Below are positions 2,279 to 54,465 of a stretch of DNA of 64,000 bases, one piece after another. The number at the start of each line of letters is the position of its first letter. The stretch's first letter is position 1. The notes below the pieces were generated by a model. The model was not told where the DNA came from, searched no databases, and saw only the letters and a program-made list of their open reading frames with translations. The position numbers were made by a program, and so were the translations under genes. The stretch lies in contig NC_043020.1 of assembly GCF_006345805.1 (NCBI RefSeq), positions 10,974,001 to 11,038,000 on the forward strand, written 5' to 3'. This DNA comes from Octopus sinensis (lineage: Eukaryota).

Positions 2279-2652
2279 TTAGTTTAACCTGCTCATATAC
2301 AAAAAGCTAGAGGGCTTATTGGGGCTGATGAATTTTGCCTGGTTCATCCTCAAAAATACTGCGTCATTAACTGTAAGTTTGTATCTAAATGATAATTGTA
2401 TCATGGCATGTTCCGTTATGTTTAAAGAACTTGAACTTTTCTTCATGAACACATAATCTTTTTCACTATTCTTTCTCTCCAACATTATGGTTGTAACTGC
2501 TGGTGGAGCACCAACTGGAATATGTAATTGCACTGCACAAGTTATTTGGTAAATCCCATCTTGAGGTATAACAATGTAACTGCCATTAATCAGTTTGATG
2601 TTGCCTAGATCCTGGCTCTCATCTTTTATCCACTGTAAATTAGTCGGTCCAT
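2279..2652 (-). CDS. TNF-like gene A exon 4 (TNF homology domain, 374 nt to stop)
   Basis: tttttcag|ATGGACCG acceptor (phase 1); [35 protein letters not shown]...[10 protein letters not shown]; by hand alignment about half of the residues are identical to gene B exon 4. Confidence 0.9.
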
Positions 2653-5600
2653 CTGAAAAATAAATAATAATAGTAATAATAATAATCCACTCTAAATAAT
2701 CCATCTGAAAAAGAAATAATAATAGTAATAATAATAATCCACTGTAAATAATCCATATGAAAAAGAAATAATAATAGTAATAATAATAATCCACTGTAAA
2801 TAATCCATCTGAAAAAGAAATAATAATAGTAATAATAATAATCCACTGTAAATAATCCATCTGAAAAAGGAATAATAATAGTAATAATAATAATCCACTG
2901 TAAATAATCCATCCGAAAAAGAAATAATAATAGTAATAATAATAATCCACTGTAAATAATCCATCTGAAAAAGAAATAATAATAGTAATAATAATAATCC
3001 ACTGTAAATAATCCATCTGAAAAAAAATAATAATAGTAATAATAATAATCCACTGTAAATAATCCATCTGAAAAAGAAATAATAATAGTAATAATAATAA
3101 TCCACTGTAAATAATCCATCTGAAAAAGAAATAATAATAGTAATAATAATAATCCACTGTAAATAATCCATCTGAAAAAGAAATAATAATAGTAATAATA
3201 ATAATCCACTGTAAATAATCCATCTGAAAAAGAAATAATAATAGTAATAATAATAATCCACTGTAAATAATCCATCCGAAAAAGAAATAATAATAGTAAT
3301 AATAATAATCCACTGTAAATAATCCATATGAAAAAGAAATAATAATAGTAATAATAATAATCCACTGTAAATAATCCATCTGAAAAAGAAATAATAATAG
3401 TAATAATAATAATCCACTGTAAATAATCCATCCGAAAAAGAAATAATAATAGTAATAATAATAATCCACTGTAAATAATCCATCTGAAAAAGAAATAATA
3501 ATAATAGTAATAATAATAATCCACTGTAAATAATCCATCTGAAAAAGGAATAATAATAGTAATAATAATAATCCACTGTAAATAATCCATCCGAAAAAGA
3601 AATAATAATAGTAATAATAATAATCCACTGTAAATAATCCATCTGAAAAAGAAATAATAATAGTAATAATAATAATCCACTGTAAATAATCCATCTGAAA
3701 AAAAATAATAATAGTAATAATAATAATCCACTGTAAATAATCCATCTGAAAAAGAAATAATAATAGTAATAATAATAATCCACTGTAAATAATCCATCTG
3801 AAAAAGAAATAATAATAGTAATAATAATAATCCACTGTAAATAATCCATCTGAAAAAGAAATAATAATAGTAATAATAATAATCCACTGTAAATAATCCA
3901 TCTGAAAAAGAAATAATAATAGTAATAATAATAATCCACTGTAAATAATCCATCTGAAAAAGGAATAATAATAGTAATAATAATAATCCACTCTAAATAA
4001 TCCATCTGAAAAAGAAATAATAATAGTAATAATAATAATCCACTCTAAATAATCCATCTGAAAAAGAAATAATAATAGTAATAATAATAATCCACTGTAA
4101 ATAATCCGTCCGAAAAAGAAATAATAATAGTAATAATAATAGTCCACTGTAAATAATCCATCTGAAAAATAAATAATAATAGTAATAATAATAATCCACT
4201 GTAAATAATCCATCTGAAAAAGAAATAATAATAGTAATAATAATAATCCACTGTAAATAATCCATCCGAAAAAGAAATAATAATAGTAATAATAATAATC
4301 CACTGTAAATAATCCATATGAAAAAGAAATAATAATAGTAATAATAATAATCCACAGTAAATAATCCATCTGAAAAAGAAATAATAATAGTAATAATAAT
4401 AATCCACTGTAAATAATCCATCTGAAAAAGAAATAATAATAGTAATAATAATAATCCACTGTAAATAATCCATCCGAAAAAGAAATAATAATAGTAATAA
4501 TAATAATCCACTGTAAATAATCCATATGAAAAAGAAATAATAATAGTAATAATAATAATCCACAGTAAATAATCCATCTGAAAAAGAAATAATAATAGTA
4601 ATAATAATAATCCACTGTAAATAATCCATCTGAAAAAGAAATAATAATAGTAATAATAATAGTCCACTGTAAATAATCCATCTGAAAAAGAAATAATAAT
4701 AGTAATAATAATAATCCACTGTAAATAATCCATCCGAAAAAGAAATAATAATAGTAATAATAATAATCCACTGTAAATAATCCATATGAAAAATAAATAA
4801 TAATAGTAATAATAATAATCCACTGTAAATAATCCATCTGAAAAAGAAATAATAATAGTAATAATAATAATCCACTGTAAATAATCCATCTGAAAAAGAA
4901 ATAATAATAGTAATAATAATAATCCACTGTAAATAATCCATATGAAAAATAAATAATAATAGTAATAATAATAATCCACTGTAAATAATCCATCTGAAAA
5001 AGAAATAATAATAGTAATAATAATAATCCACTGTAAATAATCCATCCGAAAAAGAAATAATAATAGTAATAATAATAATCCACTGTAAATAATCCATCTG
5101 AAAAAGAAATAATAATAATAGTAATAATAATAGTAGTAATAATAATAACAATAATAATAATAATAATAATAATAATTGCTTTTATTTGCCAAGGATAAGG
5201 GGGACAATACAAAGACAGACATAATGTTCTGGGGTTTAGATATAACAAAATAATAAACAAAAAAAAAAGAAAGCATACATGGTATATAATAAAACAAAGG
5301 TAAGTACACTTAGTATGCAACAGTAAATAGAAAGTAGAAGGGTAAGAAATGGATGATGATGGGGTCTTCCTGATACAGGAGGACCTCTAGGGATAATTGA
5401 GAAAACCCAAGGCAAGAACACTCTCCAATACCTACTTTCCAGCTCACAGGTCTATACGTAGTGGTACCATCCACTCTTGCCATTTTCACAATTTTCATCC
5501 ACCTTTCAATAGATTCACTCAAGGACAGCACCTCCCTCTCTATCCTCACTTTCCTTTTCAAGGTAAAACTTGAAAAAGTCAATAGGGGCTCTACCAAGGT

Positions 5601-8600
5601 CTCTGTCCTCATACCTTTCAGCCCTGTCCATCATACAACTGCTTTTGCAATCACCCACAAACAAAGGAAAACTGCCTCCCCTGCAGTAAAGCAAGGTGGT
5701 GGGCCAATCATCACTATGGATTTGATTGATAGACAGATCCATCCCACATGTAACAACAGTGGAGGCACATGGCCTAGTGGTTAGAGCAGTGGTCTCGCAG
5801 TCAAGGGATCGTAGGTTATCATTCAGCTAGTGTTAGAAACATAAATTGTGACTAAGGTTTGGTGGAAGATTTTAATTCAAAACTTATGAAAACAAGACAT
5901 TTGTACTACAGAGCTAGAGGCAGTTTCAGCCGGGTTGGTAACAAAAGGGTTAAGGGGATAATTCAACTTATGAGAAAAAGCGTGCAATAAATCTGTATAA
6001 ATCAGCTTACCTAACTCAGTGTAACCCCTTGTTTTTAGGAGAAAGAAGGCATGTTGAACTGAAAGATAAGAAGAGAGAAAGCAGACAGTGAGAAGGATAT
6101 ATTTGAATACAGGTTCAATATCTGGCAGAAGACTAAAACCAGAAAGGACATTTCTTGATGTATTTCATATATTTAATATTTCAGATTATCATCTAATAAA
6201 TAACTATACAACATATCAACTGTTTCACAATTATTATTATCATAATTAAAATGATCTACATAGACAACAATTATTAACCATTAATGAAAGAGAGCCAAGA
6301 CTTTATAAATATCTATATATTACACCCATCACTTGTAGTTTCATGAGCTTTAATATGGTCAGTTGTATAGAAGCGATGCTTTGCTGGGACTCATCCTCCT
6401 CATCATCATCATCATTTAATGTCCACTTTCCATGCTAGCATGGGTTGGACGATTTGACTGAGGTCTGGCGAACCAGACTCCGATCTGATCTGGCAGTGTT
6501 TCTACAGCTGGATGCCCTTCCCAACGCCAACCACTCCGAGAGTGTAGTGGGTGCTTTTACGTGCCACCGGCACAAGGGCCTGTTTGGCGATACTGGCAAC
6601 GGCCATGACCAAATGGTGCTTTTTACGTGCCACCTGCACAGGAGCCAGTCCAGTGGCACTGGTGACGACCTCGCTCGAATGTTTCACATGCCACCAGCAC
6701 AGGTGCTAGTAAGGTGACTCAGTAACGATCACGCTCGAATGATGTGCATAAATGTGCCAAGTTTAGTACAATTCTAGTAAACATGTACAGGAGGCTTCAT
6801 CCTATCAAAGTGTCATCTAAAGCCATGGTCCAGTTAATCCTTGTAGACATTTCATTCAAATATTTAATGATGTGGGTATTTTTACTATTTATTTCTTTAG
6901 TATGTCTGATATTTTTCAAGTTGCCTATCTTAAGACTGTAATGTATTGAGGACATGTTTAGTCCCCAAAGTCCATCCCCTCCTCACCGTGGCAGGGACGC
7001 TGGCAACGGGTAGTGTCATAGCTATGCTGTCGGGAACTTCAGTTCCTGGTAGGGCCACCCGAGGCGGATTGGTCTGACACCTAGTGGTATTAGGGCCACA
7101 ACCCAGCGGTGAAAATCGTCGGAGTGTCTGTTTCGGCAACCGGCGGCTTCTCGGTCGTTCTGTCCCTGCGCCTGCGGACAATCTGCGGCAAACAGGATGT
7201 CTCTACATGCGGGATAGTGTCATAGCTATGCTGTCGGGAACTTCAGTTCCTGGTAGGGCCACCCGAGGCAGATTGGTCTGACACCTAGTGGTATTAGGGC
7301 CACAACCCAGCGGTGAAAATCGTCGGAGTGTCTGTTTCGGCAACCGGCGGCTTCTCGGTCGTTCTGTCCCTGCGTCTGCGGACAATCTGCGGCAAACAGG
7401 ATGTCTCTACATGCGGGATTGTTGGGGACCGCTTGTGAAATTCATATTCCCACGAAACTTCTTCCACTGCCATGGTTCGAGATGCCTCGAGGGTGGTAGA
7501 AGAAGCCGACTCAACCCGCCCAGGGTGAATGTCGCCACAAGTACAAGTAAGTAAGTAAGTATGTTTAGTGATTTAACGTTACAATATGTTATGGTGTCAG
7601 AGGATTTTATAGACACATGGATGGTGTAATGGTGACAACATATATACTTACATAGTGGAGGAGCTGGTAGAGGATACTGCCGCTAAAGTAGAAAGATAAG
7701 GAAATGAGAAAAGGACAATTAAGACGGTAATTGGTGTTGTTTATATTACTTTCATCATATTACTCCCTCCTTTACAATTTGTCAGTCTTGTTACAGTCTT
7801 GTCACAGTCTTGGTACGGACCTGATACACTTGTTACAGCATTGTTATTCTCCAGTAACTCACTTGTTATACTCCAATTACTTTTGTCTTACACTTGATAC
7901 ACCATTGTAACATTCCTGTTAGTATTTGTTTCTTGTTACATAGTCTGCCATTACATTCATGTTACAAACATGTTACATGTATTATTACTGTTACATACAT
8001 TATTGCTATGTAGCTGTACTATTAATCTTGTTATACTCACAACTGTCAGCTTACTCTTGAGATGGTTGATCAGTGGAGACATAGATTTTATTCATAATGA
8101 CTTCTACAGGATCTGATTATTATCTGTTTCTTTACTACCCACAAGGGGCTAAACACAGAGGGGACAAACAAGGACAGACAAACGGATTAAGCCAATTGTA
8201 TCGACCCCAGTGCGTAACTGCTACTTATTTAATCGACCCCAAAAGGATGAAAGGCAAAGTCAACCTCGGCAGAATTTGAACTCAGAACGTAGCAATGAGT
8301 TCAAATTCCGCCGAGGTCGACTTTGCTTTCCATCCTTTCGGGGGTCGATATAATCGACTTAATACGGTTGTCTGTCCTTGTTTGTCCCCTCTGTGTTTAG
8401 TCCCTTGTGGGTTGATCATTGGAGACATAGATTTTATTCATAATGACTTCTACAGGATCTGATTATTATCTGTTTCTTTATTACCCACAAGGGGCTAAAC
8501 ATAGAAGGGACAAACAAGGACAGACACACGGATTAAGTCGATTCTATCGACCTCAGTGCGTAACTGGTATTTAATTTATCGACCCCAAAAGGATGAAAGG

Positions 8601-11600
8601 CAAAGTCAACCTCAGCAGAATTTGAACTCAGAACGTAGCAATGAGTTCAAATTCCGCCGAGGTCGACTTTGCTTTTTATCCTTTCGGGGTCGATAAGTTA
8701 AGTACCAGTTAGGCACTGGGGTCGATATAATTGACTTAATCCGGTTGTCTGTCCTTGTTTGTCTCTCTGTGTTTGGCCCCTTGTGGGTAGTAAAGAAATA
8801 GGTATTTCGTCCGCTGTAACGTTCTGAGTTCAAATTCTGCCGAGGTCAACTTTGCCTTTCATCCTTTCGGGTTCGATAAATTAAGTACCAGTTACGCACT
8901 GGGGTTGATATAATTGACTTAATCCGGTTGTCTGTCCTTGTTTGTCCCCTCTATGTTTAGCCCCTTGTGGGTAATAAAGAAACAGATAATAATCATATCC
9001 TCTGATTATTATCATTAAAAACAGAAAACAGAAGAAGCAGAGACAGATGCAGCATTGGAAACAGATGATGGGGTAAGCTTGTGACACCCCACAGGACTTG
9101 CTGAATTCTATCACAATGGCCCCTTATTCAAGAATGGTCATAAAAATGAATGACGAAAAAACTGAAGCATTTCTTTACATTCTATAGTCAGGAAGATCTT
9201 TACAAAAATGTTACTCAACAGATTCAGAGAATCAATCACCGTATATTTACCTGAATCCCAATTATGTTCAGATGGGGATAAGCAGTAGAGACAAGGTGTT
9301 CTTTCTTTATCAGATTCAGAAGAAATACGATGAATGGAACAAACCATATTGCTAATTTTTCCAAATATGTACAATCAGTAGAGATGGCAGGCTTAGTTTT
9401 TAGATAGTTCAGAGAATGACTGTGGAATGACAAAGACATTATATTCCAAGTGAAGTATAAAGCTTTAAGACCGCGACCTGTTTGACAAATTAAACTTTTT
9501 GTGACACCCTACAGGACTTGCTGAATTCTATCACAATGGCCCCTTATTCAAGAATGGTCATAAAAATGAATGACCAAACTACTGAAGCATTTCTTTACAC
9601 TCTATAGTTTTTAGATAGTTCTTTGACAACTTTTGTGACACCCTACAGGACTTGCTGAATTCTATCACAATGGCCCCTTATTCAAGAATGGTCATAAAAA
9701 TGAATGACCAAACTACTGAAGCATTTCTTTACACTCTATAGTTTTTAGATAGTTCTTTGACAACTTTTGTGACACCCTACAGGACTTGCTGAATTCTATC
9801 ACAATGGCCCCTTATTCAAGAATGGTTATAAAAATGAATGACCAAACTACTGAAGCATTTCTTTACACTCTAAAGTTTTTAGATAGTTCTTTGACAAATT
9901 AAACTTTTGTGACACCCTACAGGACTTGCTGAATTCTATCACAATGGTCCCTTATTCAAGAATGGTCATAAAAATGAATGACCAAACTATTGAAGCATTT
10001 CTTTACATTCTATAGTTTTTAGATAGTTCAGAGAATGACTGTGGAATGACAAAGACATTATATTCCAAGTGAAGTATAAAGCTTTAAGACCGCGACCTGT
10101 TTGACAAATTAAACTTTTTGTGACACCCTACAGGACTTGCTGAATTCTATCACAATGGCCCCTTATTCAAGAATGGTCATAAAAATGAATGACCAAACTG
10201 CTGAAGCATTTCTTTACACTCTATAGTTTTTAGATAGTTCTTTGACAAATTAAACTTTTGTGACACCCTACAGGACTTGCTGAATTCTATCACAATGGCC
10301 CCTTATTCAAGAATGGTCATTAAAATGAATGACCAAACTACTGAAGCATTTCTTTACACTCTATAGTTTTTAGATAGTTCTTTGACAAATTAAACTTTTT
10401 GTGACACCCTACAGGACTTGCTGAATTCTTTCACAATGGCCCCTTATTCAAGAATGGTCATAAAAACGAATGACCAAACTATTGAAGCATTTCTTTACAT
10501 TCTATAGTTTTTAGATAGTTCAGAGAATGACTGACGAATGACAAAGACATTATATTCCAAGTGAAGTATTAAGCCTACCGATCAATAACACTGGATAACA
10601 AAAAAACATTTTTTGTATGTTGTTTTAGTTTTCGCATGTCGTGTTCAGCTTTCCATACTTTGTTCCGGGTCTCGCTCATCTGCAAATTTCAACCACTTTA
10701 ACTGATCAGCATTTTTTTATGCAACTGACCTTGTTCACATGCATCTCATGACCAAACCAGTCCAGTTTTCCTACTAGTACATTGCATTGAATTCTTCTTT
10801 ATGCCAAGCTTTTCCTTCAGTACAGTAGCACTCTGTTATACACACACAACCACACACACACACACACACACACACATGTATGTAATGTAAGTAAGTATGT
10901 ATATACACATATAACTGGATGTGCTTGACACATGATAATTATACCATTCAAGTTGCAGCTCTAGTTTTAATCACATTTAAACTCTCATATATATACTATA
11001 TTTATAGTATTTAATTGATACTATATAACTACGAATTGATTATTTCATTAAGTATTTTATCATTTTATTTTAACTATAAGATTTTTGAAAGTTATTATTT
11101 AGCCAACGAGATAAAAAGATAGTTAATTTGCTATAGCAAATTGATACTATATAACTACGAATTTTAATTTTAATTTTTAAGTATTAATTTTTAAGGTAAG
11201 AAACCCACAAATAATCTAATAGCGGTTTTATCTCTAATTTAATATATATATATATATATATACGTGAAGGCGCAATGGCCTAGTGGTTAGGGCAGCGGAC
11301 TCGCGGTTTCGATTCCCAGACCGGGCGTTGTGAGTGTTTATTGAGCGAAAACACTTAAAAGCTCCACGAGGCTCCGGTAGGGGTTGGTGATCCCTGCTGT
11401 ACTCTTTCTCCCACTCTTTCTTCTGTTGGCCTGCTTGCTTAGCCAGCGGGGTGGCGTCATTCAAAGGCTAAAAAAACAATGCGAACGCATTGTGACCAGC
11501 GATGTGTAACAACATCTGATGGTCTGGTCGGTCACGTGATCACGTGATATATATATATATATTTAATGTATGGATTTATGTAATCTAGTGGTAATCACAA

Positions 11601-11909
11601 AAAAGGCTCCTTTAGGGGACCTGGCAACATACCAGTGCATAGGAGCATAGAGTCCTATGCAGTTGAATCGAGTAAATCCAATCAGTGAACATTATTTCAT
11701 GAGGATTATACAGAATGGTATCAAAAGGTTCCTGAACTAGTTAAATTTGGCTGTGTGGTAAGTAGCTTGCTTACGAACCACATGGTTCCAGGTTCAGTCC
11801 CACTGCATGGCACCTTGGGCAAGTATCTTCTACTATAGCCTCAGGCCAACCAAAGCCTTGAGTGGATTTAGTAGACGGAAACTGAAAGAAGCCCATCGTT
11901 TATATGTAC

Positions 11910-11957
<48 letters not shown>

Positions 11958-12007
11958 ACAATTTAACAAATAAAACATATGCATACATATATGTACGTAC
12001 CTACATC

Positions 12008-12070
<63 letters not shown>

Positions 12071-14139
12071 GCATATATGAGTACAGGACACCACAAATAA
12101 ACGTAGAACACAACGAGAAACGAAAACATAAAATCAAACAAGGAAACGGACTTTTTTTAACAACAAAAAAAACAGAGTACAAGACAAACAATACAAGGAA
12201 TATTCCCCTTCATCAGCAGCCCTTGGTTCGACTCAATGTGTATATATATATATATATACATACATATATATACATCTATATGTGTGTTTGTGTGTCTGTG
12301 TTTGTCCCCCACCCACCCAACATCGCTTGACAACCGATGCTGGTGTGTTTACGTCCCCGTAACTTAGCGGTTCGGCAAAATAGACCGATAGAATAAGTAC
12401 TAGGCTTACAAAGAATAGGTCCTGGGGTCGATTTTCTCAACTAAAGGAGGTGCTCCAGCATGGCCGCAGTCAAATGATTGAAACAAGTAAAAGAGTAAGA
12501 GAGTATTTATCCAGGTTTTAACATTTCTTTTGAAATAGTCACTTTGCGGAGCAATACACCGTTCCCGTCGTCCTTGCCACTTTTGGAATCCGACCTGGAT
12601 TCAAGCAAGTCAAGGACCTACTGAATTCCCTCTGGATCTCAACAAAGGTGTTAAAACAATGACCCCTGAGCGTCATTTTCATCTTGGGGAAGATGGACGT
12701 CCGCAGGTGCTAAATCTGGCAAATAGGGCAGGTGTAGATGTGATGCTATGTTGTTTTGAGAAAGAAACACATGAATGAGGAGAACTTGGTGAAGAATCCA
12801 ATTCTTCGTGCTTCACAGACTCGGTTGCTTTCAACAAATGTCCTCTCTCAAATGCTTCAAAATGTTACAGTAGAACTCTTGATTAAGGGCTGGCCCTAGG
12901 GGGCAAATTCTCGATGCACAATATATTTTCGAAGGTGATGCTTATGGCAAGTCTTCCAAATTACTCATCGTCTTCCAAGGACACTCTTCCACTTTTGAAA
13001 CACTTGTGCCACTTAAAACATTGCATACGACTCACTGCCTCATTGCTGTAAGCTTGCCAAAGCATGCTCAATATTTTTCTAACAGGCGAGCTGGCAGAAA
13101 CGCTAGCACGCCGGGCGAAATGCGTTGCCGTATTTCGTCTGCCGTTACGTTCCGAGTTCAAATTCCGCCGAGGTCGACTTTGCCTTTCATCCTTCCGGGG
13201 TCGATAAATTAAGTACCAGCTACGCACTGGGGTCGATGTAATCGACTTAATCCCTTTGTCTGTCCTTGTTTGTCTCCTCTGTGTTTAGCCCCTTGTGGGT
13301 AGTAAGGAAATAAATATTTCTCTAACAGACTCCCCAAGTTTAGCACAAAATTTCATGTTGGCTCTTTGTTCCTGTCCATGACAAAATCGCAAACTACACC
13401 ATACATGTAATCACAAAACCGCAAATTTCACAACTTTAGAAGTAAACACAGCACTCACTTAGCGCAGTACCTCATGAAGGTCACTGCTGGCTCACACTGT
13501 GCATATAACTGTGTACTTCCACCCGTTGGCACAGTACAGAACTAGTCTGAGAACCTTTTGATACCACTTTGTATAGAATATAAAGAAAGTCAAGAGGTAG
13601 ATGCATATATTTATTTCACCAGTTCATATCCGTAGGACGACGGTTATTTTGCAGTCAACCTCAAACAAAAATAATCTATTTTAGTGTAGATTATTTTATG
13701 CGCAACTCCATTGTCTCCCGAGACAAAAAGGATGTCAACAACCCCAGTATAGCCCCACTTTTCTCCCAAGTTGGGAGACAATACCGGCCACTTTGGGAAC
13801 CACTGGTGGAGATTATATCAGAATTTGATGTTAAAAAAAAAGAAAAGAAAAGAAAAAAATTATGGGTTACAGTTTGTAAATAGAAATGTGATATGTAGAT
13901 GTGTGCGCTCAACGATTTGTTTTTGACATTAAATTCTGCTTAGTTTAAAATTTACACCATCTGAAATACCGACATTTGGGCGATTAACGAAAGATCGTCT
14001 ATATTTCTAGAAAAAAAAATTAATTTCAATATCTATTTTTCTGATAATTATGAAAAAACAAAGTGAGCGAGTGGGGGAGGGGCAGAGTTTGTTGACAGAC
14101 ACACAAATACTCAAGTACATACACGCATAGATAGGAAGG

Positions 14140-14194
<55 letters not shown>

Positions 14195-14212
14195 ATAGAT
14201 AGACAGACAGAG

Positions 14213-14295
<83 letters not shown>

Positions 14296-14424
14296 CAGAC
14301 AGATAGACAGACAGACAGACAGACAGATAGACAGACAGACAGACAGATAGATAGATAGATAGATACATAGCTAGATAAGATAGATAGATACATAGATAGA
14401 TAAGATAGATAAATAGATAGATAA

Positions 14425-14505
<81 letters not shown>

Positions 14506-15087
14506 AAATAAAACTTTAAGGTTTACCTGAGATAGGACAATAGCAATAATCGCCAGTGTTATCGCAACAATGAGAAGAATAATAGAGATTAGAAAATATT
14601 TTAAGAGAGACTGCTGGGATTTAGTTTTGCTTGATGGTACCTGGGGTTGCAATGAAGGTGTTGATTTAGGACTGTTTTGTTCGATGTCGACTGCTCTACT
14701 TCCTGGTTTGAAAATTACTTTAGCTTTTCCTTCTTGAATTAAACATTCAGCTTCAGGTTTATTGTCATCGGTTAATGACAATTTTGGTGGTAGATCTTTA
14801 CTGTCTTCATCAATTTGAACATGGGTGTCAGTTTCCTTGTGTTTTGGTGTGTCTTGTTCGTTGTCCTCACTGCAGGCTTGGCTAGCAGCTCCTTCCACGT
14901 CTCCGTCGAAACACGGTGATTGTTCTTCTTGAGCAGGCGATGGCATAGCATCACGCTCAGTTATTACATTAGACTCAGGTATTACATTAGGATAGGGTTT
15001 TGCATCAGGATCTGGTACTGCACCAGTATCTGGTATTGCACCAGTATCTGGTATTGCATCAGGATCTGCGGGTATAATAGTGGGCAT
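2279..15087 (-). CDS. TNF-superfamily ligand gene A (type II membrane protein, 4 coding exons, 337 aa): join complement(15087-14527, 7682-7652, 6058-6011, 2652-2279)
   Basis: All junctions are GT-AG, phases 0,1,1, and the frame stays open (561+31+48+374=1014 nt). Architecture: acidic N-tail, TM, Pro-rich stalk, TNF homology domain (AFFLL...NLQW...[17 protein letters not shown], cf. human TNF QLQW...LVVPSEGLYLIYSQV). The paralog at 37693-54379 has the same structure. Extra in-frame exons in intron 1 cannot be excluded. Confidence 0.85.
2653..5105 (-). repeat. 52-bp minisatellite, about 47 copies, made of the exon-4 splice acceptor plus the exon start
   Basis: Sense unit: tattattattactattattatttctttttcag|atggattatttacagtggat. 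True exon start: cag|ATGGACCGACTAATTTACAGTGGAT. Confidence 0.95.
5177..5760 (-). mobile_element. 3' end of an L1/Tx1-like non-LTR retrotransposon
   Basis: Frameshifted [36 protein letters not shown]-terminus, then a 3' UTR with AATAAA (5181-5186) running into (ATT)n. The clade call is from memory of such C-termini. Confidence 0.5.
6011..6058 (-). CDS. TNF-like gene A exon 3 (48 nt, [16 protein letters not shown]; first THD strand)
   Basis: cttatctttcag acceptor, TTAG|GTAAGC donor, phase 1 to 1; same length as and homologous to 43475-43522. Confidence 0.85.
6400..6745 (-). mobile_element. Short element or truncated copy sharing the RTE 3' end, (TGA)n tail
   Basis: Matches the reverse complement of 19300-19670. 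Further copies at 19970-20125, 25605-25960, 37185-37517, 56925-57245 and 59705-60285. Confidence 0.8.
6963..7560 (+). mobile_element. GC-rich SINE-like retroposon with (AAGT)n tail and a 201-bp internal tandem duplication
   Basis: 9-bp TSD atgtttagt (6954-6962 and 7561-7569); absent at the homologous position in gene B (~45920); second copy at 59011-59388. Confidence 0.8.
7652..7682 (-). CDS. TNF-like gene A exon 2 (31-nt micro-exon, [10 protein letters not shown])
   Basis: Long polypyrimidine tract plus ctactttag acceptor; donor CTAT|GTAAGT; phase 0 to 1 as required; flanks homologous to gene B exon 2. Confidence 0.8.
8065..9000. repeat. Palindromic, tandemly duplicated array of tRNA-derived SINE family S2
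   Basis: Head-to-head S2 halves meet at ~8297 and ~8640; a ~346-bp unit is duplicated (8065 and 8410); the flank is also inverted (8456 vs ~8961-9000). Confidence 0.85.
9081..10570. repeat. Tandem repeat, 8 copies, unit 134-141 bp with 211- and 420-bp long variants
   Basis: gtgacacc anchor at 9081, 9501, 9635, 9769, 9909, 10120, 10260 and 10401. Confidence 0.9.
11262..11548 (+). mobile_element. tRNA-derived SINE (family S3)
   Basis: A box tggcctagtggttagg, B box ggtttcgattccc; same head as the reverse copy at 21640-22027. Confidence 0.75.
11749..12503 (+). mobile_element. SINE family S1 with an expanded internal (TA)n
   Basis: S1 head at 11749-11900 and tail at 12290-12503. Confidence 0.8.
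12530..13083 (-). pseudogene. Degenerate mariner transposase fragment
   Basis: [31 protein letters not shown] (mariner HTH region), followed by degenerate catalytic and C-terminal residues ([16 protein letters not shown]); many stops. Confidence 0.75.
13085..13312 (+). mobile_element. tRNA-derived SINE family S2
   Basis: ggcgagctggcagaaacg head, gagttcaaattcc B box, gggtagtaa tail. Other single copies at 23935-24152(-), 27913-28143(+), 43195-43427(+) and 61258-61425(+). Confidence 0.85.
14128..14505. repeat. (GATA)n/(GACA)n microsatellite about 20 nt inside gene A intron 1
   Basis: Direct reading. Confidence 0.95.
14527..15087 (-). CDS. TNF-like gene A exon 1 (187 aa: cytoplasmic tail plus [24 protein letters not shown])
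   Basis: ATG at 15087 with an in-frame TGA 3 nt upstream; non-repetitive ORF; hydrophobic helix ends at CAG|GTAAAC donor (phase 0); (TCTA)n microsatellite follows. Confidence 0.85.
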
Positions 15088-15439
15088 GTTTCAAAGTTTC
15101 GCAAACAAAGAAATAACACGACGTTGAGCTAACACGACATTAACTGCAGCTAAAAAACAACTTTTTACCTAACCTGAACTTTAGCATTACTCACTTCCCC
15201 TCTAATCACCTGCTCTTCTTTTCTCATTGAATACAGGTAGCCTTCTCCAATAACTTCTTCTCTCTCTCCCTTCCCCTCTCTCTCTCTCTCTCTCTCTCCC
15301 CTTCTCTCTCCGTCTCTTACCTTTCATCCCTCTCTTCTTTTCTTCCTGTCTTTTTCTTTCTCCCCTGCTATATCTCAGTTCTTCTCTATCTATTCCTCTA
15401 CACAACTCTTCTTTCAATCCTTGCGCTTTCATTTTATTA

Positions 15440-16640
<1,201 letters not shown>

Positions 16641-17348
16641 AAAGACTCCCATCCAGCCTCACGCTAATACCTATACCCTGTTCTTATCCCTAGCCTATGA
16701 CTTTCTTAAATTTTTGTTTCCTCAGATGCTATATTTTATTCAAAATATTCACCACAGCCTTTCCTTGCATGATTAACTTTGTACAAAAGAAAAAAAATAT
16801 ACAGAATTCTTTTTTGCTGCAGCAACAAGGTAAAGAAATTAAATCCTACCACACCTATATTTCTATGAAATATATATTTATGTAGTTGACAAACTGTACT
16901 ACAACAACTAAATTAGGTTATGAATGTCAATTGTAAGATTGGATAAAATTACAAAATACACCTGAAATGTAACTTTATCTTTATTCAATTGCAACTTCCA
17001 ATTGCAACTACAGTTACTGTACATGTATATGTTAAAGAGGTAGTACAATGCAGAAAAGTAAATAGTAAACTTACACTGTAAACCTGAAAAGAAAAGTTAG
17101 CTTTGAATTGAGGTCAATCAGAACTATGTACTCTTTTTCTCTTTTGTACTCTTTTACTTGTTTCAGTCATTTGACTGCGGCCATGCTGGAGCACCGCCTT
17201 TAGTCGAGCAACTCGACCCCGGGACTTATTCTTTGTGAGCCCAGTACTTATTCTATCGGTCTCTTTTGCCGAACCGCTAAGTGACAGGGGACATAAAAGC
17301 ATCGGTTGTCAAGCAATGCTAGGGGGACAAACACAGACACACAAACAA

Positions 17349-17405
<57 letters not shown>

Positions 17406-17409
<4 letters not shown>

Positions 17410-19670
17410 AGTTGATAGTTCTGTGGTAGCTAAGGCAATTAGAAGCATGAAGACAGGGAAAGCCCCAGGCCCATCAGGAATCACTGCAGAGATGCTCAAA
17501 ATGTCTGGTAGTGTCGGCTATAGCCTAGTCACCCATATAGTTAATCAGGTGATACACAAAGGGGTCATACCCAATGACTGGTGTAGCAGTATAATAGTCA
17601 ACTGCTACAAAGGTAAAGGTGATGCCCTAGATACAAATAACTACAGAGGTATCAAGCTGTTGGACAGGTGATGAAGGTTACGGAGAGGGTCATAGCCCAA
17701 CTAATTAGAGAGAGAGTTAGTTTAGATGAGATGCAGTTTGGGTTTGTGCCAGGGAAAAGTACTACTGATGCTATATTCCTGGTAAGGCAGCTGCAGGAAA
17801 ATACCTAGCCAAAGATAAGCCCCTGTACCTGGCTTTTGTTGACATGGAGAAGCCTTCGACAGGGTCCCCCGATCCCTTATCTGGTGGGCATGAGAAAACT
17901 AGGGATAGATGAATGGTTAGTGAGAGCTGTGCGGGCCATGTATAGGGACGCCGCTAGTAGGGTGAGGGTTGGAAATGAGTACAGTGAAGAATTCCGGGTA
18001 GAGGTAGGGGTCCACCAAGGCTCAGTACTCAGCCCCCTCCTATTTATCATAGTCCTCCAGGCAATAACGGAGGAATTCAAGACAGGATGCCCTTGGGAGC
18101 TCCTCTATGCTGATGACCTTGCTCTAATTGCTGAGTCGCTATCAGAACTGGAGGAGAAGTTTCAGGTGTGGAAACAAGGATTAGAATCGAAGGGCCTCAG
18201 AGTCAATCTAGCTAAAACCAAAGTCGTAATCAGTAGGAAGGTAGACAAATCACAAACACCTTCAGGTAGATGGCCCTGCTCGATCTGTAGAAAAGGTGTA
18301 GGTAGAAACTCTATAAGATGCACCAAGTGTAAGCTATGGACACATAAGAGATGCAGCAATGTCAAAGGAAGGCTAACTAGGAAGATGGTTTTTGTATGTG
18401 GCAGATGCTCAGGAACAATAAACACTGAAAATGCTCTGAGACCAACTTCCGTCACTTTCCAGGGAGAAAAACTAGAAATAGTTGATAGTTTCCGTTACCT
18501 AGGTGACCAAGTCAGCAGCGGGGGTGGGTGTGCTGAAAGTGTAACTGCTAGAGTAAGAATAGCTTGGGCAAAGTTCAGAGAGCTCTTACCTCTGCTGGTG
18601 ACAAAAGGCCTCTCGCACAGAGTGAAAGGCAGACTGTATGATGCGTGTGTACGAACAGCCATGCTACATGGCAGTGAAACATGGGCCGTGACTGCTGAGG
18701 ATATGCGTAAGCTCGCTAGAAATGAAGCCAGTATGCTCCGGTGGATGTGTAATGCCGGTACTCCACACTCGGCAGAGTGTAAGTACCTTGAGAGAAAAGC
18801 TGGACCTAAGAAGCATCAGTTGTGGTGTGCAAGAGAGACGTTTGCGCTGGTATGGTCATGTGGCGAGAATGGATGAAGATAGTTGTGTGAAAAAGTGCCA
18901 CACCCTAGCGGTTGAGGGAACCTGTGGAAGAGGCAGACCCAGGAAAACCTGGGACGAGGTGGTGAAGCACGACCTTCGAACTTTAGGTCTCACTGAGGAA
19001 ATGACTAGAGACCGAGACCTCTGGAAGTGTGCTGTGCGCGAGAAGACCCGGCAGGACAAGTGAGTCCACAACCCGTGGCCTTCTACATGGGATGGAGCCA
19101 GCCTACGTATGCATACCTTCCCTTCTTGGGACACAAAACTCTACTTGTGAAGACGTGTTGAGGCAAGTGAGGATCATAATCGAAATCGATCAATGGAAAT
19201 TGCGGATGTGCTACCAGTGCCTGTGGCATGTCGAAACTCTGCTTGTGAAGACCCATTGAGGCAAGTGAGGATCAGAATCGAAATCGATCAATGGAATCGA
19301 TCAATGGAAATTGCAGATGTGTTACCAGTGCCGGTGGCATGTAAGAGAACTTTCCGTTTCGCGACCGTTGCCAGCACCGCCCCGTTTCGTGTCCGTTGCC
19401 AGCCTCGCCTGGCCCTCGTGCCGGTGGCACATAAAAGCACCATCCGTTCGTGGCCGTTTGCCAGCTCTGTCTGGCACCAGTGCGGGTGGCACGTAAAAAG
19501 CACCCACTACACTCACGGAGTGGTTGGCGTTAGGAAGGGCATCCAGCCGTAGAAACACTGCCAGATTTGACTGGGCCTGATGAAGCCTTCTGGCTTCACA
19601 GACCCCAGTAGAACCGTCCAACCCATGCTAGCATGGAAAACGGACGCTAAATGATGATGATGATGATGAT
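17406..19670 (+). mobile_element. 5'-truncated RTE-clade LINE (RT domain, PHD-like finger, 3' UTR, (TGA)n tail)
   Basis: KAPGPSGIT..., QFGF, QGSVLSPLLF, YADD, FRYLG, RLRWYGHV motifs across three frameshifted ORFs; ends aaatgatgatgatgat. Confidence 0.92.
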
Positions 19671-30769: not shown

Positions 30770-31190
30770 GCAATCCCTCCATCATCTCACACTTCAGAAT
30801 AAGATCATCTGCATACAGTATCTCCATTACTAATCCCTCTCTTGCACTCCCCATCACCACATCAACCACTGTTACAAACAACAATGGTGACAACACAGAT
30901 CCCTAATGCACACCAACTTTCATTGCAAACTCCTCCGACAGCTCTGATCCAATTCTAACTCTTGTCTTTACCCCCTCATACAAACTCATCACTGCCCTCA
31001 CTATTACCTCAAGTACACCTCTCTTCCTCAATGCCCACTCAATCACCTTCCTTGGAACCCTATCAAATGCCTTCTCCAGATCAATAAAGCACATGTACAA
31101 CTCCTCCTTATCTTGGTATTTCTCTTGCAATCTCCTTACAATGAACACTGCTTCTGTTGTCCTCCTTCCAAGCATAAAACCCAAATAAAA
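30770..31190 (-). mobile_element. RTE-type RT fragment
   Basis: GF..GR.TTEAVFIVRRLQEKY...FIDLEKAFDRVPR...GSVLSPLLF...LYADDL. Confidence 0.85.
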
Positions 31191-33296: not shown

Positions 33297-33619
33297 TTAA
33301 GTCTCACTAGCAGTCACCCAACTTTTGCCCTGGTCTGTACTGTACTCACATACATCTCTTGTAATGCCCAGGAGTCGAATTGTAGCTAAAACTTGCTAGT
33401 TTCCAGTCTTCACGAAAAAAAGGTCTAAATTCTAAACCAACTTGTCATCGTTCTGATGTTTCCTGTTCTCTGGAGGAAACATTTCTGGCTGCATTACTTT
33501 GAAGTTGTTTTGTAAACCCCTGTTCTCTTAAGCAAGCTTTTCTATCAGCTTGAGGCTCCAGTCTCCCTTGTTTCTGTTCTGGTATCTTGTGTTTCCTGAA
33601 GTTGGTAACAAAGGCTCTC

Positions 33620-34489: not shown

Positions 34490-35960
34490 TGGTAGTGTAC
34501 ACATAACCATGTCAACACTTCTACTTGGAGTTGTTTACTGCCCTCCCAAATTATCATCAAGACACACAACTTTTTGATATCCTCAGACTTGCTGCCATGG
34601 AAACAGCCATATATGTTTATATTGCAGGGGACTTCAATTTCCCGGAGATTGACAGGGAAGCCTTCCATTGGCCGCAAAGTGCAGACGATTTCGTTAAGCT
34701 AGTGCTGAATTCAAATTGGTCCCAAGTCGTTACCTCCCCCACAAGGGGTAACAACACTTTGGATCTGCTACTTACCGCTTCTCCTGAAACAATCATTAGT
34801 GTCGCTACTGAAGAACCTTTAGGTGACTCTGATCATTCCATGATCATTGCTGACTTGTCTCTGACTGATTGTAAAAAAAAACCGCAAACATCTTCAAACT
34901 GCCTGCTTTGACTGGAATAAAGCAGACTGGAACTCTTATCGTACCGAGCTGCAACGCTCAAACTGGCTCGAATTTTATGTTTATGGAAATGTAAACACTA
35001 TACTTTAGAACATCTTGAATTCAATATGGACGGCATATGCAGCACTGGTACCACACAAGCACCAAAAACCACCCAATAGTGCAAATTGGGAGATTGCAGC
35101 AGTCCAACTTGCCAGGAAAGAACGCCGTAATGCTGAACAGGAATACAAAATGCACAAATCAGAGATCAACAGGAAAAAGCGCAATAGATCATCCAACCAT
35201 CTCAAGCAGGTGACAAAAAAAGCAGTGCTTGAATTCGAACAGCGCATAGCAACCAACCCTCACAGCAAAGTGTTCTGGAAGTATGTACATTCAAAGCAGA
35301 GACCTCACTCTCCAGTTGGTCCCCTTTGCAATACCCACACAGGCCAGATTACTGACAATCCCAAAGAATGTGCAGAAATCATTGCTGGATGCTATGCAGG
35401 CATCTTTACTGTCGAAGATCAAAATGTTCCATCTCCATCACCTCTGACACCGGACTCTATAACTACTATGAAATTTACACCAGCAATGCTACAACGCCAC
35501 CTTAAGAATAAAGGTAACTATGCCTTTCCTGGTCTCGATGGTGTTACATACCTACTTCTCAAACACGGTGGGTACTTTCTTCTGAACCAACTTACACTAT
35601 TTTTTCTATTCTCTCTTGACAATGGTATTATTCCAGAGCAGTGGAAAACTGCCAGTGTCATCCCTCTGTTCAAAAAAGGTGACCGCACATCGCCTGTCAA
35701 ATATCGCCCCGTTAGTCTTACTAGCTGCATCACCAAACTGATGGAATCCTGTATCAGAGAAACCCTCTGGAACTTCTAGAAGTCTCACAGCCTCATCCAG
35801 CCATCACAATTTGGATTTATTCCTAAATCCAGCTGCTGTAATCAACTCATCGAATTTCTTGAGGACATTACCCGAATCACTGATGGCAGCTCCTGGGTGG
35901 ATGTTGTTTACCTGGACTTTGCTAAGGTTTTTAATTCTGTGCCACACAAAAGACTTATAA
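34490..35960 (+). mobile_element. CR1-type LINE ORF2 fragment (APE plus RT N-terminal part)
   Basis: GDFNFP...PTRGNNTLDLLL...LGDSDH; KVFWKYV; WKTASVIPLFKKGDR...YRPVSLTS; QFGF; VYLDFAK. Confidence 0.88.
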
Positions 35961-37692: not shown

Positions 37693-54379
<16,687 letters not shown>

Positions 54380-54407
54380 ATTTGAATGTTTTGGTTCACA
54401 AAAGATC

Positions 54408-54465
54408 AACACGATATCAACACGATCACCCAACTAAATCTGGTTCCGGGGTTTCGGAATTTATA
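54408..54465 (-). promoter_or_regulatory. Putative core promoter/5' UTR of gene B (TATAAAT at 54465-54459; TCGTGTT doublet)
   Basis: TATA-like box ~80 nt upstream of the ATG; the TCGTGTT doublet is shared with gene A (15115-15137). Confidence 0.4.

What the first reader, a model, noticed from the sequence alone, without database searches (positions are those of the whole stretch)
14923..14946. Receptor-type TRAF-binding motif (MxxxAQEE) conserved in the cytoplasmic tails of both ligands
Seen: gene A has MPSPAQEEQ (aa 48-56) and gene B has MTRIAQEED (aa 1-9, 54353-54379), with the same Met-to-AQEE spacing in otherwise unalignable tails. Established: the major TRAF2/1/3 consensus is (P/S/A/T)x(Q/E)E, found on TNF receptors (CD40 PVQE, OX40 PIQEE, 4-1BB T/AQEED), not typically on ligands. 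Inference: these ligands may recruit TRAFs directly for reverse or bidirectional signalling.
Basis: partly seen in the sequence, partly recalled or inferred. Interest (0 to 1): 0.7.

Follow-up and report, generated by a model that had tools for sequence, protein, structure and literature searches.

The report
Shared acidic tag in octopus TNF-ligand tails
Two neighbouring octopus TNF-type cytokine genes share a four-residue acidic stretch (AQEE) near the start of their intracellular tails; it is most likely a leftover of their common origin and not a demonstrated docking site for TRAF signalling adaptors.

Summary
The strings exist exactly as described. MPSPAQEE is at 14946-14923 (minus strand, gene A aa 48-55) and MTRIAQEED at 54379-54353 (gene B aa 1-9). 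Both genes are intact four-exon, type II TNF-superfamily ligand genes in a tandem octopod cluster.

The "Met-to-AQEE spacing" is a coincidence. Gene A's homologous start is M1 (15087), because only its 5' flank matches the flanks of the paralogues' start codons. M48 corresponds to an Ile (ATA) in the closest relative, P0026 (MPTVIPQPAEEM). It sits in the last copy of an 18-bp coding repeat that inserted about 40 residues into gene A.

The core (P)A(Q)EE is probably inherited from the cluster ancestor, so "shared" holds. The evidence does not support a selected TRAF site:
- The consensus [PSAT]x[QE]E occurs by chance in about 50% (gene A) and 20% (gene B) of shuffled tails.
- Family-wide, 4 of 14 tails match against 3.8 expected.
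- Between orthologues the element changes faster (2/6 and 3/6 identical) than the rest of the tail (70-80%).
- Key positions vary: I/P/L, Q/N and E/Q; gene D has AEQ.

TRAF binding could not be tested and is not excluded (about 10%). Ordinary finding, low interest.

The parts
14923..14946 (-). Gene A codons 48-55, MPSPAQEE. The core PAQEE is 14923-14937. It matches Px(Q/E)E (PAQE) and [PSAT]x[QE]E (AQEE).
   Evidence: It aligns ungapped to P0026 IPQPAEEM, with ATG opposite ATA.
54353..54379 (-). Gene B codons 1-9, [13 protein letters not shown] matches only the loose consensus (Ala at P-2). The Met is the initiator.
   Evidence: Orthologues read MTRPANEEE and MTRLANEEE. A transcript contig, L002, carries the same start.
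14527..15087 (-). Gene A exon 1 (187 codons): a 164-aa cytoplasmic tail, the transmembrane segment, and a phase-0 GT donor.
14956..15068 (-). An 18-bp in-frame tandem repeat (about 7 copies of the hexapeptide IPxxxA) inserted between MPTIIP and SPAQEE of gene A. It is derived from the single IPQPA unit seen in P0026.
   Evidence: Tandem Repeats Finder; translation; alignment to P0026.
15088..15123 (-). Conserved non-coding block directly 5' of gene A's M1 (..CGTGTT..TCTTTGT..GCGAAACTTTGAAAC ATG). It marks the homologous start codon.
   Evidence: z = 7.2 against P0026, 6.7 against D, 4.9 against E.
54380..54415 (-). The same conserved 5' block upstream of gene B's M1.
   Evidence: z = 7.2 against D, 4.5 against P0026, 5.1 against E.
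7652..7682 (-). Gene A exon 2 (31 nt, [10 protein letters not shown] plus 1 base), homologous to gene B exon 2.
   Evidence: blastn to the gene B exon 2 region, with AG/GT sites.
6011..6058 (-). Gene A exon 3 (48 nt, [15 protein letters not shown]).
2279..2652 (-). Gene A exon 4 (374 nt): TNF homology domain and stop codon.
   Evidence: (PF00229, 28.2 bits against a cutoff of 23).
54173..54379 (-). Gene B exon 1 (69 codons): a 50-aa tail, the transmembrane segment, and a phase-0 GT donor.
46011..46053 (-). Gene B exon 2 (43 nt).
43475..43522 (-). Gene B exon 3 (48 nt, [15 protein letters not shown]).
37693..38066 (-). Gene B exon 4 (374 nt): TNF homology domain and stop codon.
   Evidence: The AF2 model of the 99%-identical P0002 has the TNF fold.

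Best explanation
The window carries two tandem paralogues, A and B, of an octopod-restricted cluster of TNF-superfamily ligand genes. Both encode type II membrane proteins with a disordered N-terminal cytoplasmic tail, one transmembrane helix, a short stalk and a jelly-roll TNF domain.

The shared AQEE is a remnant of the ancestral 5' end of exon 1. Cluster members keep a block of about 35 nt of 5'UTR, the ATG, and a few first codons of the form M-x-T-x-I-(P-x-P)-A-(Q)-E-E. In gene B the element follows the start directly (MTRI-AQEE). In gene A an 18-bp coding repeat amplified the preceding IPxPA unit about sevenfold and pushed the element to residues 51-55. An Ile-to-Met change (ATA to ATG) in the last repeat copy created the illusory MxxxAQEE spacing.

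The resemblance to the TRAF1/2/3/5 motif Px(Q/E)E is most likely incidental. The consensus carries little information, the tails are acidic and disordered, and the positions that would contact TRAF drift between orthologues and paralogues.

Shown: gene models, fold, topology, start-codon homology, origin of M48, lack of enrichment, and faster-than-tail divergence. Inferred: that the element has no specific docking role.
For: Gene identity:
- Gene models have canonical splice sites, and both genes share the same exon phases.
- Pfam TNF matches. The two TNF domains are 55% identical.
- The AF2 model of P0002 (99% identical to gene B) has residues 1-46 at pLDDT < 50, a helix at 47-72 and a beta sandwich. 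Foldseek top hits are TL1A, TNF, CD40L and APRIL, with target-normalised TM-score about 0.8.

Homology of the start and origin of M48:
- The 5' flank of gene A's M1 matches P0026, D and E, and B through D and P0026. The flank of M48 matches nothing.
- Tail-only BLASTP aligns A 47-118 to P0026 15-87 (E = 4e-7), with [13 protein letters not shown] opposite VIPQPAEEMKSMC. The DNA alignment puts ATG opposite ATA.
- The 18-bp repeat lies at 14956-15068.

Chance:
- The consensus is expected in 51% of shuffled gene A tails, 19% of gene B tails and 9.7% of trials for both.
- Five identities in eight positions occur in 12% of shuffles.
- Family-wide, 4 of 14 paralogue groups match against 3.8 expected (P = 0.58).

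Drift:
- Gene B orthologues read IAQEED, PANEEE and LANEEE; paralogue C reads PPTQEH and VPAQQD.
- Element identity is 3/6, 3/6 and 2/6, against 80%, 70% and 75% for the rest of the tail.
- Gene D of O. bimaculoides reads I-T-D-A-E-Q at the homologous place, and gene E has no such element.
Against: In each of A, P0026, B (three species) and C (O. vulgaris), the only loose-consensus match in the tail is at this N-proximal element. The three gene B orthologues keep A-x-E-E despite Q-to-N, and A and P0026 keep Px(Q/E)E despite a Q/E change. That is what weak selection for an acidic TRAF-type motif could look like.

The element is cytoplasmic and disordered, and it sits on a ligand expected to trimerise, which would suit a trimeric TRAF. 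Octopus haemocytes express putative TRAF2, TRAF3 and TRAF5 homologues (PMC4199593).

Only two or three orthologues per gene were available, and no orthologue of gene A itself was found, so the rate comparison is weak.
Confidence: 0.65

Rival explanations
1. The (P)A(Q)EE element is a functional TRAF1/2/3/5-type docking site on the ligand tails, letting the trimeric ligands recruit TRAF trimers for reverse or bidirectional signalling.
For: Strict Px(Q/E)E in gene A (PAQE), P0026 (PAEE) and C of O. vulgaris (PTQE); loose A-x-E-E in all three gene B orthologues. Disordered cytoplasmic location. It resembles the receptor motifs 4-1BB TTQEE and PEEEE (PMC6262405) and the Px(Q/E)E consensus (PMC6125299). 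Putative TRAF2, TRAF3 and TRAF5 homologues are reported in O. vulgaris haemocytes (PMC4199593).
Against: No enrichment over chance. The contact positions vary: P-2 is I, P or L, P0 is Q or N, and P1 is E or Q. C of O. bimaculoides (PAQQ), D (AEQ) and E lack a match. The element evolves faster than the rest of the tail. In gene B the canonical register has Ile or Leu at P-2, or Asn at P0. No direct TRAF docking on a TNF ligand turned up in the literature searches.
Confidence: 0.12
2. The conserved block has another function. It may be maintained at the nucleotide level (5'UTR plus the first codons, for example translation-initiation context or a promoter-proximal element). Or the acidic N-terminus serves a different partner or process, such as sorting or N-terminal processing.
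For: Conservation extends about 35 nt into non-coding sequence, at least as strongly as into the first codons, in paralogues whose tails otherwise cannot be aligned. The block is transcribed in the gene B orthologue: the 5'UTR of contig L002 contains it.
Against: No conserved RNA structure was predicted. Paralogue C keeps MVTRI and P(A/T)Q(E/Q) but not the 5' block. No known motif was identified.
Confidence: 0.13
3. Pure coincidence. The two AQEE strings arose independently and are not homologous at all.
For: A shared 4-mer is expected in 8.6% of shuffles and 5-of-8 identity in 12%. BLASTP and MAFFT do not align the two AQEEs.
Against: P0026 bridges the two. It has the same 5' block and ATG as B and A, then ATA CCA CAG CCT GCT GAA GAA, compared with gene B's ATA GCT CAG GAA GAA and gene A's ATG CCA TCG CCT GCT CAA GAA GAA. 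Gene B of O. bimaculoides reads P-A-N-E-E.
Confidence: 0.1

Closest known systems
Major TRAF1/2/3/5-binding motif Px(Q/E)E of TNF-receptor tails (CD40 PVQET; 4-1BB TTQEE and PEEEE)
   Same: Same short pattern (gene A PAQE, P0026 PAEE, gene B AQEE in the loose form). It lies in a disordered cytoplasmic segment of a membrane protein that is expected to trimerise.
   Different: It sits on the ligand, not the receptor, and in gene B at residues 5-8 of the protein. The contact positions are not conserved among orthologues, and occurrence is not above chance. Binding was not tested.
Known reverse-signalling elements in TNF-ligand tails (FasL polyproline SH3/WW docking; 4-1BBL acting through Src kinases, TNFR1 and TMEM126A)
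   Same: N-terminal cytoplasmic tails of type II TNF ligands can carry short docking motifs and signal backwards.
   Different: None of the documented cases found here uses direct TRAF docking (PMC2763855, PMC7758191). The octopus tails show no recognisable SH3-type polyproline core apart from gene A's repeat-derived IPxxxA units.
Vertebrate TNF-superfamily ligands (TL1A, TNF-alpha, CD40L, APRIL)
   Same: Jelly-roll TNF homology domain (Foldseek E about 5e-9, target-normalised TM-score about 0.8) and type II topology with a single transmembrane helix.
   Different: Only 12-17% sequence identity. The octopus genes belong to a family found so far only in Octopus and Argonauta (16 representatives among 1.84 billion). 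The family lies in tandem clusters, and its tails evolve fast.

Membership tests
TNF superfamily ligand (TNF homology domain, PF00229) | Sequence match to the TNF homology domain profile | tested here: met
   Gene A exon 4 scores 28.2 bits against a cutoff of 23. Gene B scores 21.1 bits, just below the cutoff, but its orthologue P0003 carries PF00229 and sources name it a THD or TNF-profile protein.
TNF superfamily ligand (TNF homology domain, PF00229) | Jelly-roll beta-sandwich fold like solved TNF ligands | tested here: met
   AF2 model of P0002 (99% identical to gene B): domain pLDDT mostly 70-94. Top 50 Foldseek PDB hits are all TNF ligands (TL1A, TNF, CD40L, APRIL, RANKL, TRAIL, FasL), with E about 5e-9.
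TNF superfamily ligand (TNF homology domain, PF00229) | Type II topology: N-terminal cytoplasmic tail, single transmembrane helix, C-terminal ectodomain | tested here: met
   Helix at 47-72 in the model, with residues 1-46 disordered. Hydrophobic stretches close exon 1 in both genes. Orientation is inferred from family knowledge.
TNF superfamily ligand (TNF homology domain, PF00229) | Homotrimer formation and binding to a TNFR-type receptor | not testable with these tools
   No multimer modelling or binding assay was available.
TRAF1/2/3/5-binding major motif | Sequence fits Px(Q/E)E, or the loose form [PSAT]x[QE]E | tested here: met
   Gene A has PAQE (strict) and AQEE. Gene B has AQEE (loose only; the canonical register has Ile at P-2) (consensus from PMC6125299).
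TRAF1/2/3/5-binding major motif | Accessible, disordered, cytoplasmic location | tested here: met
   pLDDT is below 50 over residues 1-46 of the gene B orthologue. The element lies N-terminal to the transmembrane helix of a type II protein.
TRAF1/2/3/5-binding major motif | Contact positions (P-2, P0, P1) conserved in orthologues and paralogues at the homologous site | tested here: not met
   Gene B: I/P/L and Q/N. Paralogue C: PTQE against PAQQ. Gene D: DAEQ. Gene E: absent. The element is 33-50% identical against 70-80% for the rest of the tail.
TRAF1/2/3/5-binding major motif | Occurrence above chance expectation | tested here: not met
   Expected in 51% and 19% of shuffled tails. Family-wide, 4 of 14 match against 3.8 expected, P = 0.58.
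TRAF1/2/3/5-binding major motif | Physical, motif-dependent binding to a TRAF MATH domain | not testable with these tools
   No complex modelling or wet assay was available.
   Gene B's Met is the initiator. Gene A's M48 aligns to Ile (ATA) of P0026 and lies in the last copy of an 18-bp repeat. The flank of M48 matches no paralogue start flank.

The most novel reading that the evidence does not exclude
The N-proximal (P)A(Q/E)EE element is a genuine, weakly selected TRAF (MATH-domain) docking site kept since the ancestor of this octopod TNF-ligand cluster. Trimeric membrane ligands would then recruit TRAF trimers directly and signal backwards. This would be a receptor-type wiring on the ligand side that I did not find described for any TNF ligand.
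Probability: 0.1. Interest if true: 0.65.

Novelty: new member of a known kind. Interest (0 to 1): 0.2.

Why it matters
If ligand tails really recruited TRAFs, that would be a new mode of bidirectional TNF signalling, and testable in an invertebrate. The evidence here points instead to an ordinary inherited acidic stretch that matches a very degenerate consensus.

What remains useful:
- Corrected four-exon models for both genes.
- Gene A, an intact paralogue that is absent from the protein collections searched.
- The demonstration that a coding 18-bp repeat reshaped its tail.
- A conserved 5'UTR block that marks the true start codons across the cluster.

Tried and rejected
- **Direct alignment of the two tails.** BLASTP gave nothing. 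MAFFT of full proteins aligned M1/T3 but not the two AQEEs.
- **An apparent third instance.** IAQET in O. bimaculoides P0008 made 'AQE' look enriched (3 of 14 tails against 0.39 expected, P = 0.003). I rejected this. Through P0026, the AQE of P0008 aligns to gene A's CLIQE (aa 115-119), not to aa 52-55, and P0008 starts at an internal Met of the P0026-type tail.
- **M48 as an alternative start.** This would explain the spacing, but nothing upstream of M48 resembles any paralogue start flank.
- **Other TRAF motifs.** The minor motifs Px(Q/E)xxD and Px(Q/E)xT and the TRAF6 motif PxExx(Ar/Ac) are absent at the element.
- **RNA structure in the conserved 5' block.** None was predicted.
- **Orthologue of gene A.** None was found by the word-index search, exhaustive HMMER or exact look-up of the exon-1 ORF.
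- **Reaching gene A in another genome.** The O. vulgaris locus next to gene B (L007) ends about 8.5 kb short of where gene A should lie. The O. bimaculoides gene at the equivalent position (D) is a different paralogue, with 56% TNF-domain identity.
- P0008 is not on record for a DNA look-up. The species behind run SRR16213285 could not be identified.
Full report
**What is at the coordinates.** On the minus strand, 14946..14923 reads ATG CCA TCG CCT GCT CAA GAA GAA = MPSPAQEE. These are residues 48-55 of an ORF that starts at 15087. Likewise 54379..54353 reads MTRIAQEED, residues 1-9.

**The two genes.** Both peptides lie in the first exon of a TNF-type gene. Using relatives from the protein searches, tblastn and splice-site inspection, I built complete models with canonical AG/GT sites and identical exon phases.
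- Gene A: 15087-14527, 7682-7652, 6058-6011, 2652-2279 (337 aa).
- Gene B: 54379-54173, 46053-46011, 43522-43475, 38066-37693 (223 aa).

The last exons match Pfam TNF (28.2 and 21.1 bits against a cutoff of 23) and are 55% identical. An AlphaFold model was made of P0002, the 99%-identical O. vulgaris gene B protein. It has residues 1-46 disordered (pLDDT < 50), a helix at 47-72 and a confident beta sandwich. Its best PDB matches are TL1A, TNF-alpha, CD40L and APRIL (E about 5e-9, target-normalised TM-score about 0.8).

**Organism and family.** The window is 96-99% identical and colinear to O. vulgaris chromosome OX597837.1, so it comes from that species complex. An exhaustive HMMER search found only 16 related representatives among 1.84 billion proteins. 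Every one I looked up is from Octopus or Argonauta.

**Is the match more than chance?** Taken alone, no.
- Five identities in an ungapped 8-residue window occur in 12% of composition-preserving shuffles of the two tails.
- Any shared exact 4-mer occurs in 8.6%.
- The loose TRAF consensus [PSAT]x[QE]E appears in 51% of shuffled gene A tails, 19% of gene B tails, and in both in 9.7%.
- Across 14 paralogue groups, 4 tails contain a match against 3.8 expected (P = 0.58).

**The Met is a coincidence.** The last 30-36 nt before gene A's M1 (15087) form a block..CGTGTT..TCTTTGT..GCGAAACTTTGAAAC ATG. The same block stands before the start codons of the cluster paralogues: P0026 (z = 7.2), D (6.7) and E (4.9). 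B is linked through D (7.2) and P0026 (4.5). The 30 nt before M48 resemble none of them (z <= 0). Gene A's homologous start is therefore M1.

Gene A's closest relative is P0026 (O. vulgaris XP_029650685.1, same chromosome, TNF domain 64% identical). Its tail begins (MLRSLLAKLSD)MPTVIPQPAEEMKSMCVDGVTEGAG. Tail-only BLASTP aligns gene A 47-118 to P0026 15-87 (E = 4e-7), placing [22 protein letters not shown] opposite VIPQPAEEMKSMCVDGVTEGAG. At the DNA level, gene A's ATG CCA TCG CCT GCT CAA GAA GAA aligns ungapped to ATA CCA CAG CCT GCT GAA GAA ATG. M48 is thus an Ile-to-Met change.

Between MPTIIP and this unit, gene A carries an 18-bp in-frame tandem repeat (14956-15068, about 7 copies). It encodes IPxxxA hexapeptides and is evidently amplified from the single IPQPA unit. 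In gene B the Met is simply the initiator. A spliced transcript contig from another octopus (L002) carries the same ATG ACT CGG start behind the same 5'UTR.

**The acidic core is probably homologous.** Behind the shared 5' block the paralogues read as follows.

| Gene | N-terminal residues |
|---|---|
| B | M-T-R-I-A-Q-E-E |
| B, O. bimaculoides | M-T-R-P-A-N-E-E |
| B, transcript from SRR16213285 | M-T-R-L-A-N-E-E |
| P0026 | M-P-T-V-I-P-Q-P-A-E-E |
| A | M-P-T-I-I-P-[repeat]-S-P-A-Q-E-E |
| D, O. bimaculoides | M-T-R-Y-I-T-D-A-E-Q |
| C, O. vulgaris (another chromosome) | M-V-T-R-I-P-N-V-T-N-Q-P-P-T-Q-E |
| C, O. bimaculoides | M-V-T-R-I-Q-N-R-T-N-Q-V-P-A-Q-Q |

So "shared by both ligands" holds, as a relic of the ancestral 5' end of exon 1. 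It is not an independently maintained motif in otherwise unrelated tails.

**Does it behave like a selected TRAF site?** The review PMC6125299 gives Px(Q/E)E as the major TRAF1/2/3/5 motif, with the side chains at P-2, P0 and P1 making the contacts. At the homologous site:
- The strict form is present in gene A (PAQE), P0026 (PAEE) and C of O. vulgaris (PTQE).
- Only the loose form (Ala at P-2) is present in the three gene B orthologues (AQEE, ANEE).
- There is no match in C of O. bimaculoides (PAQQ), D (DAEQ) or E.

Between orthologues the six-residue element is 3/6, 3/6 and 2/6 identical, while the rest of the same tails is 80%, 70% and 75% identical. The candidate contact positions therefore drift at least as fast as the surrounding disordered tail.

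**Literature.** Human 4-1BB uses TTQEE and PEEEE (PMC6262405), so the resemblance is real at string level. Reviews describe ligand reverse signalling through Src kinases, TNFR1 association and TMEM126A for 4-1BBL (PMC7758191), and SH3/WW docking on the FasL polyproline region (PMC2763855). My searches found no case of direct TRAF docking on a TNF ligand. Putative TRAF2, TRAF3, TRAF5 and TRAF6 transcripts are reported in O. vulgaris haemocytes (PMC4199593), so a partner could exist.

**Verdict.** The best explanation is inherited sequence plus an incidental match to a low-information consensus (confidence 0.65). The TRAF-docking reading is not excluded (about 0.12). The element is cytoplasmic, disordered and on a molecule expected to trimerise, and it is the only consensus match in most of these tails. 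No test here supports it, and binding could not be tested. A third possibility (0.13) is that the block is kept for another reason, because the conservation extends into about 35 nt of 5'UTR. Pure coincidence of the AQEE core is less likely (0.10), given the bridge through P0026.

**Limits.** No orthologue of gene A itself was found, and gene A is absent from the protein collections searched. Only two or three orthologues per gene were available. The AlphaFold model is of gene B's orthologue, not of gene A. The alignment of the first few codons between subfamilies is short and rests on the conserved 5' block as an anchor.

Noticed in passing
window 2648-5131 (minus-strand gene A intron 3 and start of exon 4): A 52-bp minisatellite, 47.8 copies, 97% matches. 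On the gene strand its unit reads ...TTTCAG|ATGGA plus TTATTTACAGTGGAT, that is, copies of the exon-4 splice acceptor and the first exon-4 bases. This places about 48 decoy acceptors in front of the real one at 2653/2652.
   Followed up: partly
window 14956-15068: An 18-bp in-frame coding repeat (hexapeptide IPxxxA, about 7 copies) that lengthens gene A's tail by about 40 residues compared with P0026. It may vary in copy number between individuals.
   Followed up: yes
window 15088-15123 and 54380-54415; L004 9998-10033; L001 22279-22314; L003 20062-20097: A block of about 35 nt directly upstream of the ATG is conserved among cluster paralogues A, P0026, D, E and B, although their coding tails have diverged. 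No RNA structure was predicted. In P0026 it contains an in-frame upstream ATG that the annotation uses as the start.
   Followed up: partly
window 14301-14505: An (AGAT)n microsatellite (about 51 copies) begins right after the exon-1 splice donor of gene A. It extends the raw ORF as LSIY repeats.
   Followed up: no
window 53936-54024 (+): An Rfam tRNA match (57 bits, full model, 89 nt) inside gene B intron 1, on the opposite strand. ARAGORN finds no tRNA there. It may be an intron-containing tRNA or a tRNA-derived SINE.
   Followed up: partly
window 2279-15087 (gene A): Gene A is an intact four-exon TNF-ligand gene, but no identical or near-identical protein exists in the collections searched. 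It appears to be unannotated in O. vulgaris and O. sinensis.
   Followed up: partly
window 33448-33609; L003 10001-26261; P0008: Probable annotation errors in public models. P0005 (O. vulgaris) joins gene B exons to a transposon-derived ORF. P0007 (O. bimaculoides, 315 aa) fuses genes D and E. P0008 starts at an internal Met compared with P0026.
   Followed up: partly
L003 (O. bimaculoides), L004 and L007 (O. vulgaris) compared with the window: Cluster organisation differs between species. O. bimaculoides has B> D> E> <P0008. The window has B> A>, with P0026 about 110 kb away, convergent to an E-like gene. Gene B's intron 1 holds about 4 tandem copies of a ~5-kb segment in O. vulgaris, making the gene 33.6 kb against 16.7 kb here.
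   Followed up: partly
window 17306-19063, 30903-31184, 34525-35779, 40248-40904, 42199-42864: Reverse-transcriptase and endonuclease-like ORFs of LINE-type retroelements, together with many SINE copies and (TA)n/(GA)n microsatellites, fill the introns and the intergenic space.
   Followed up: no
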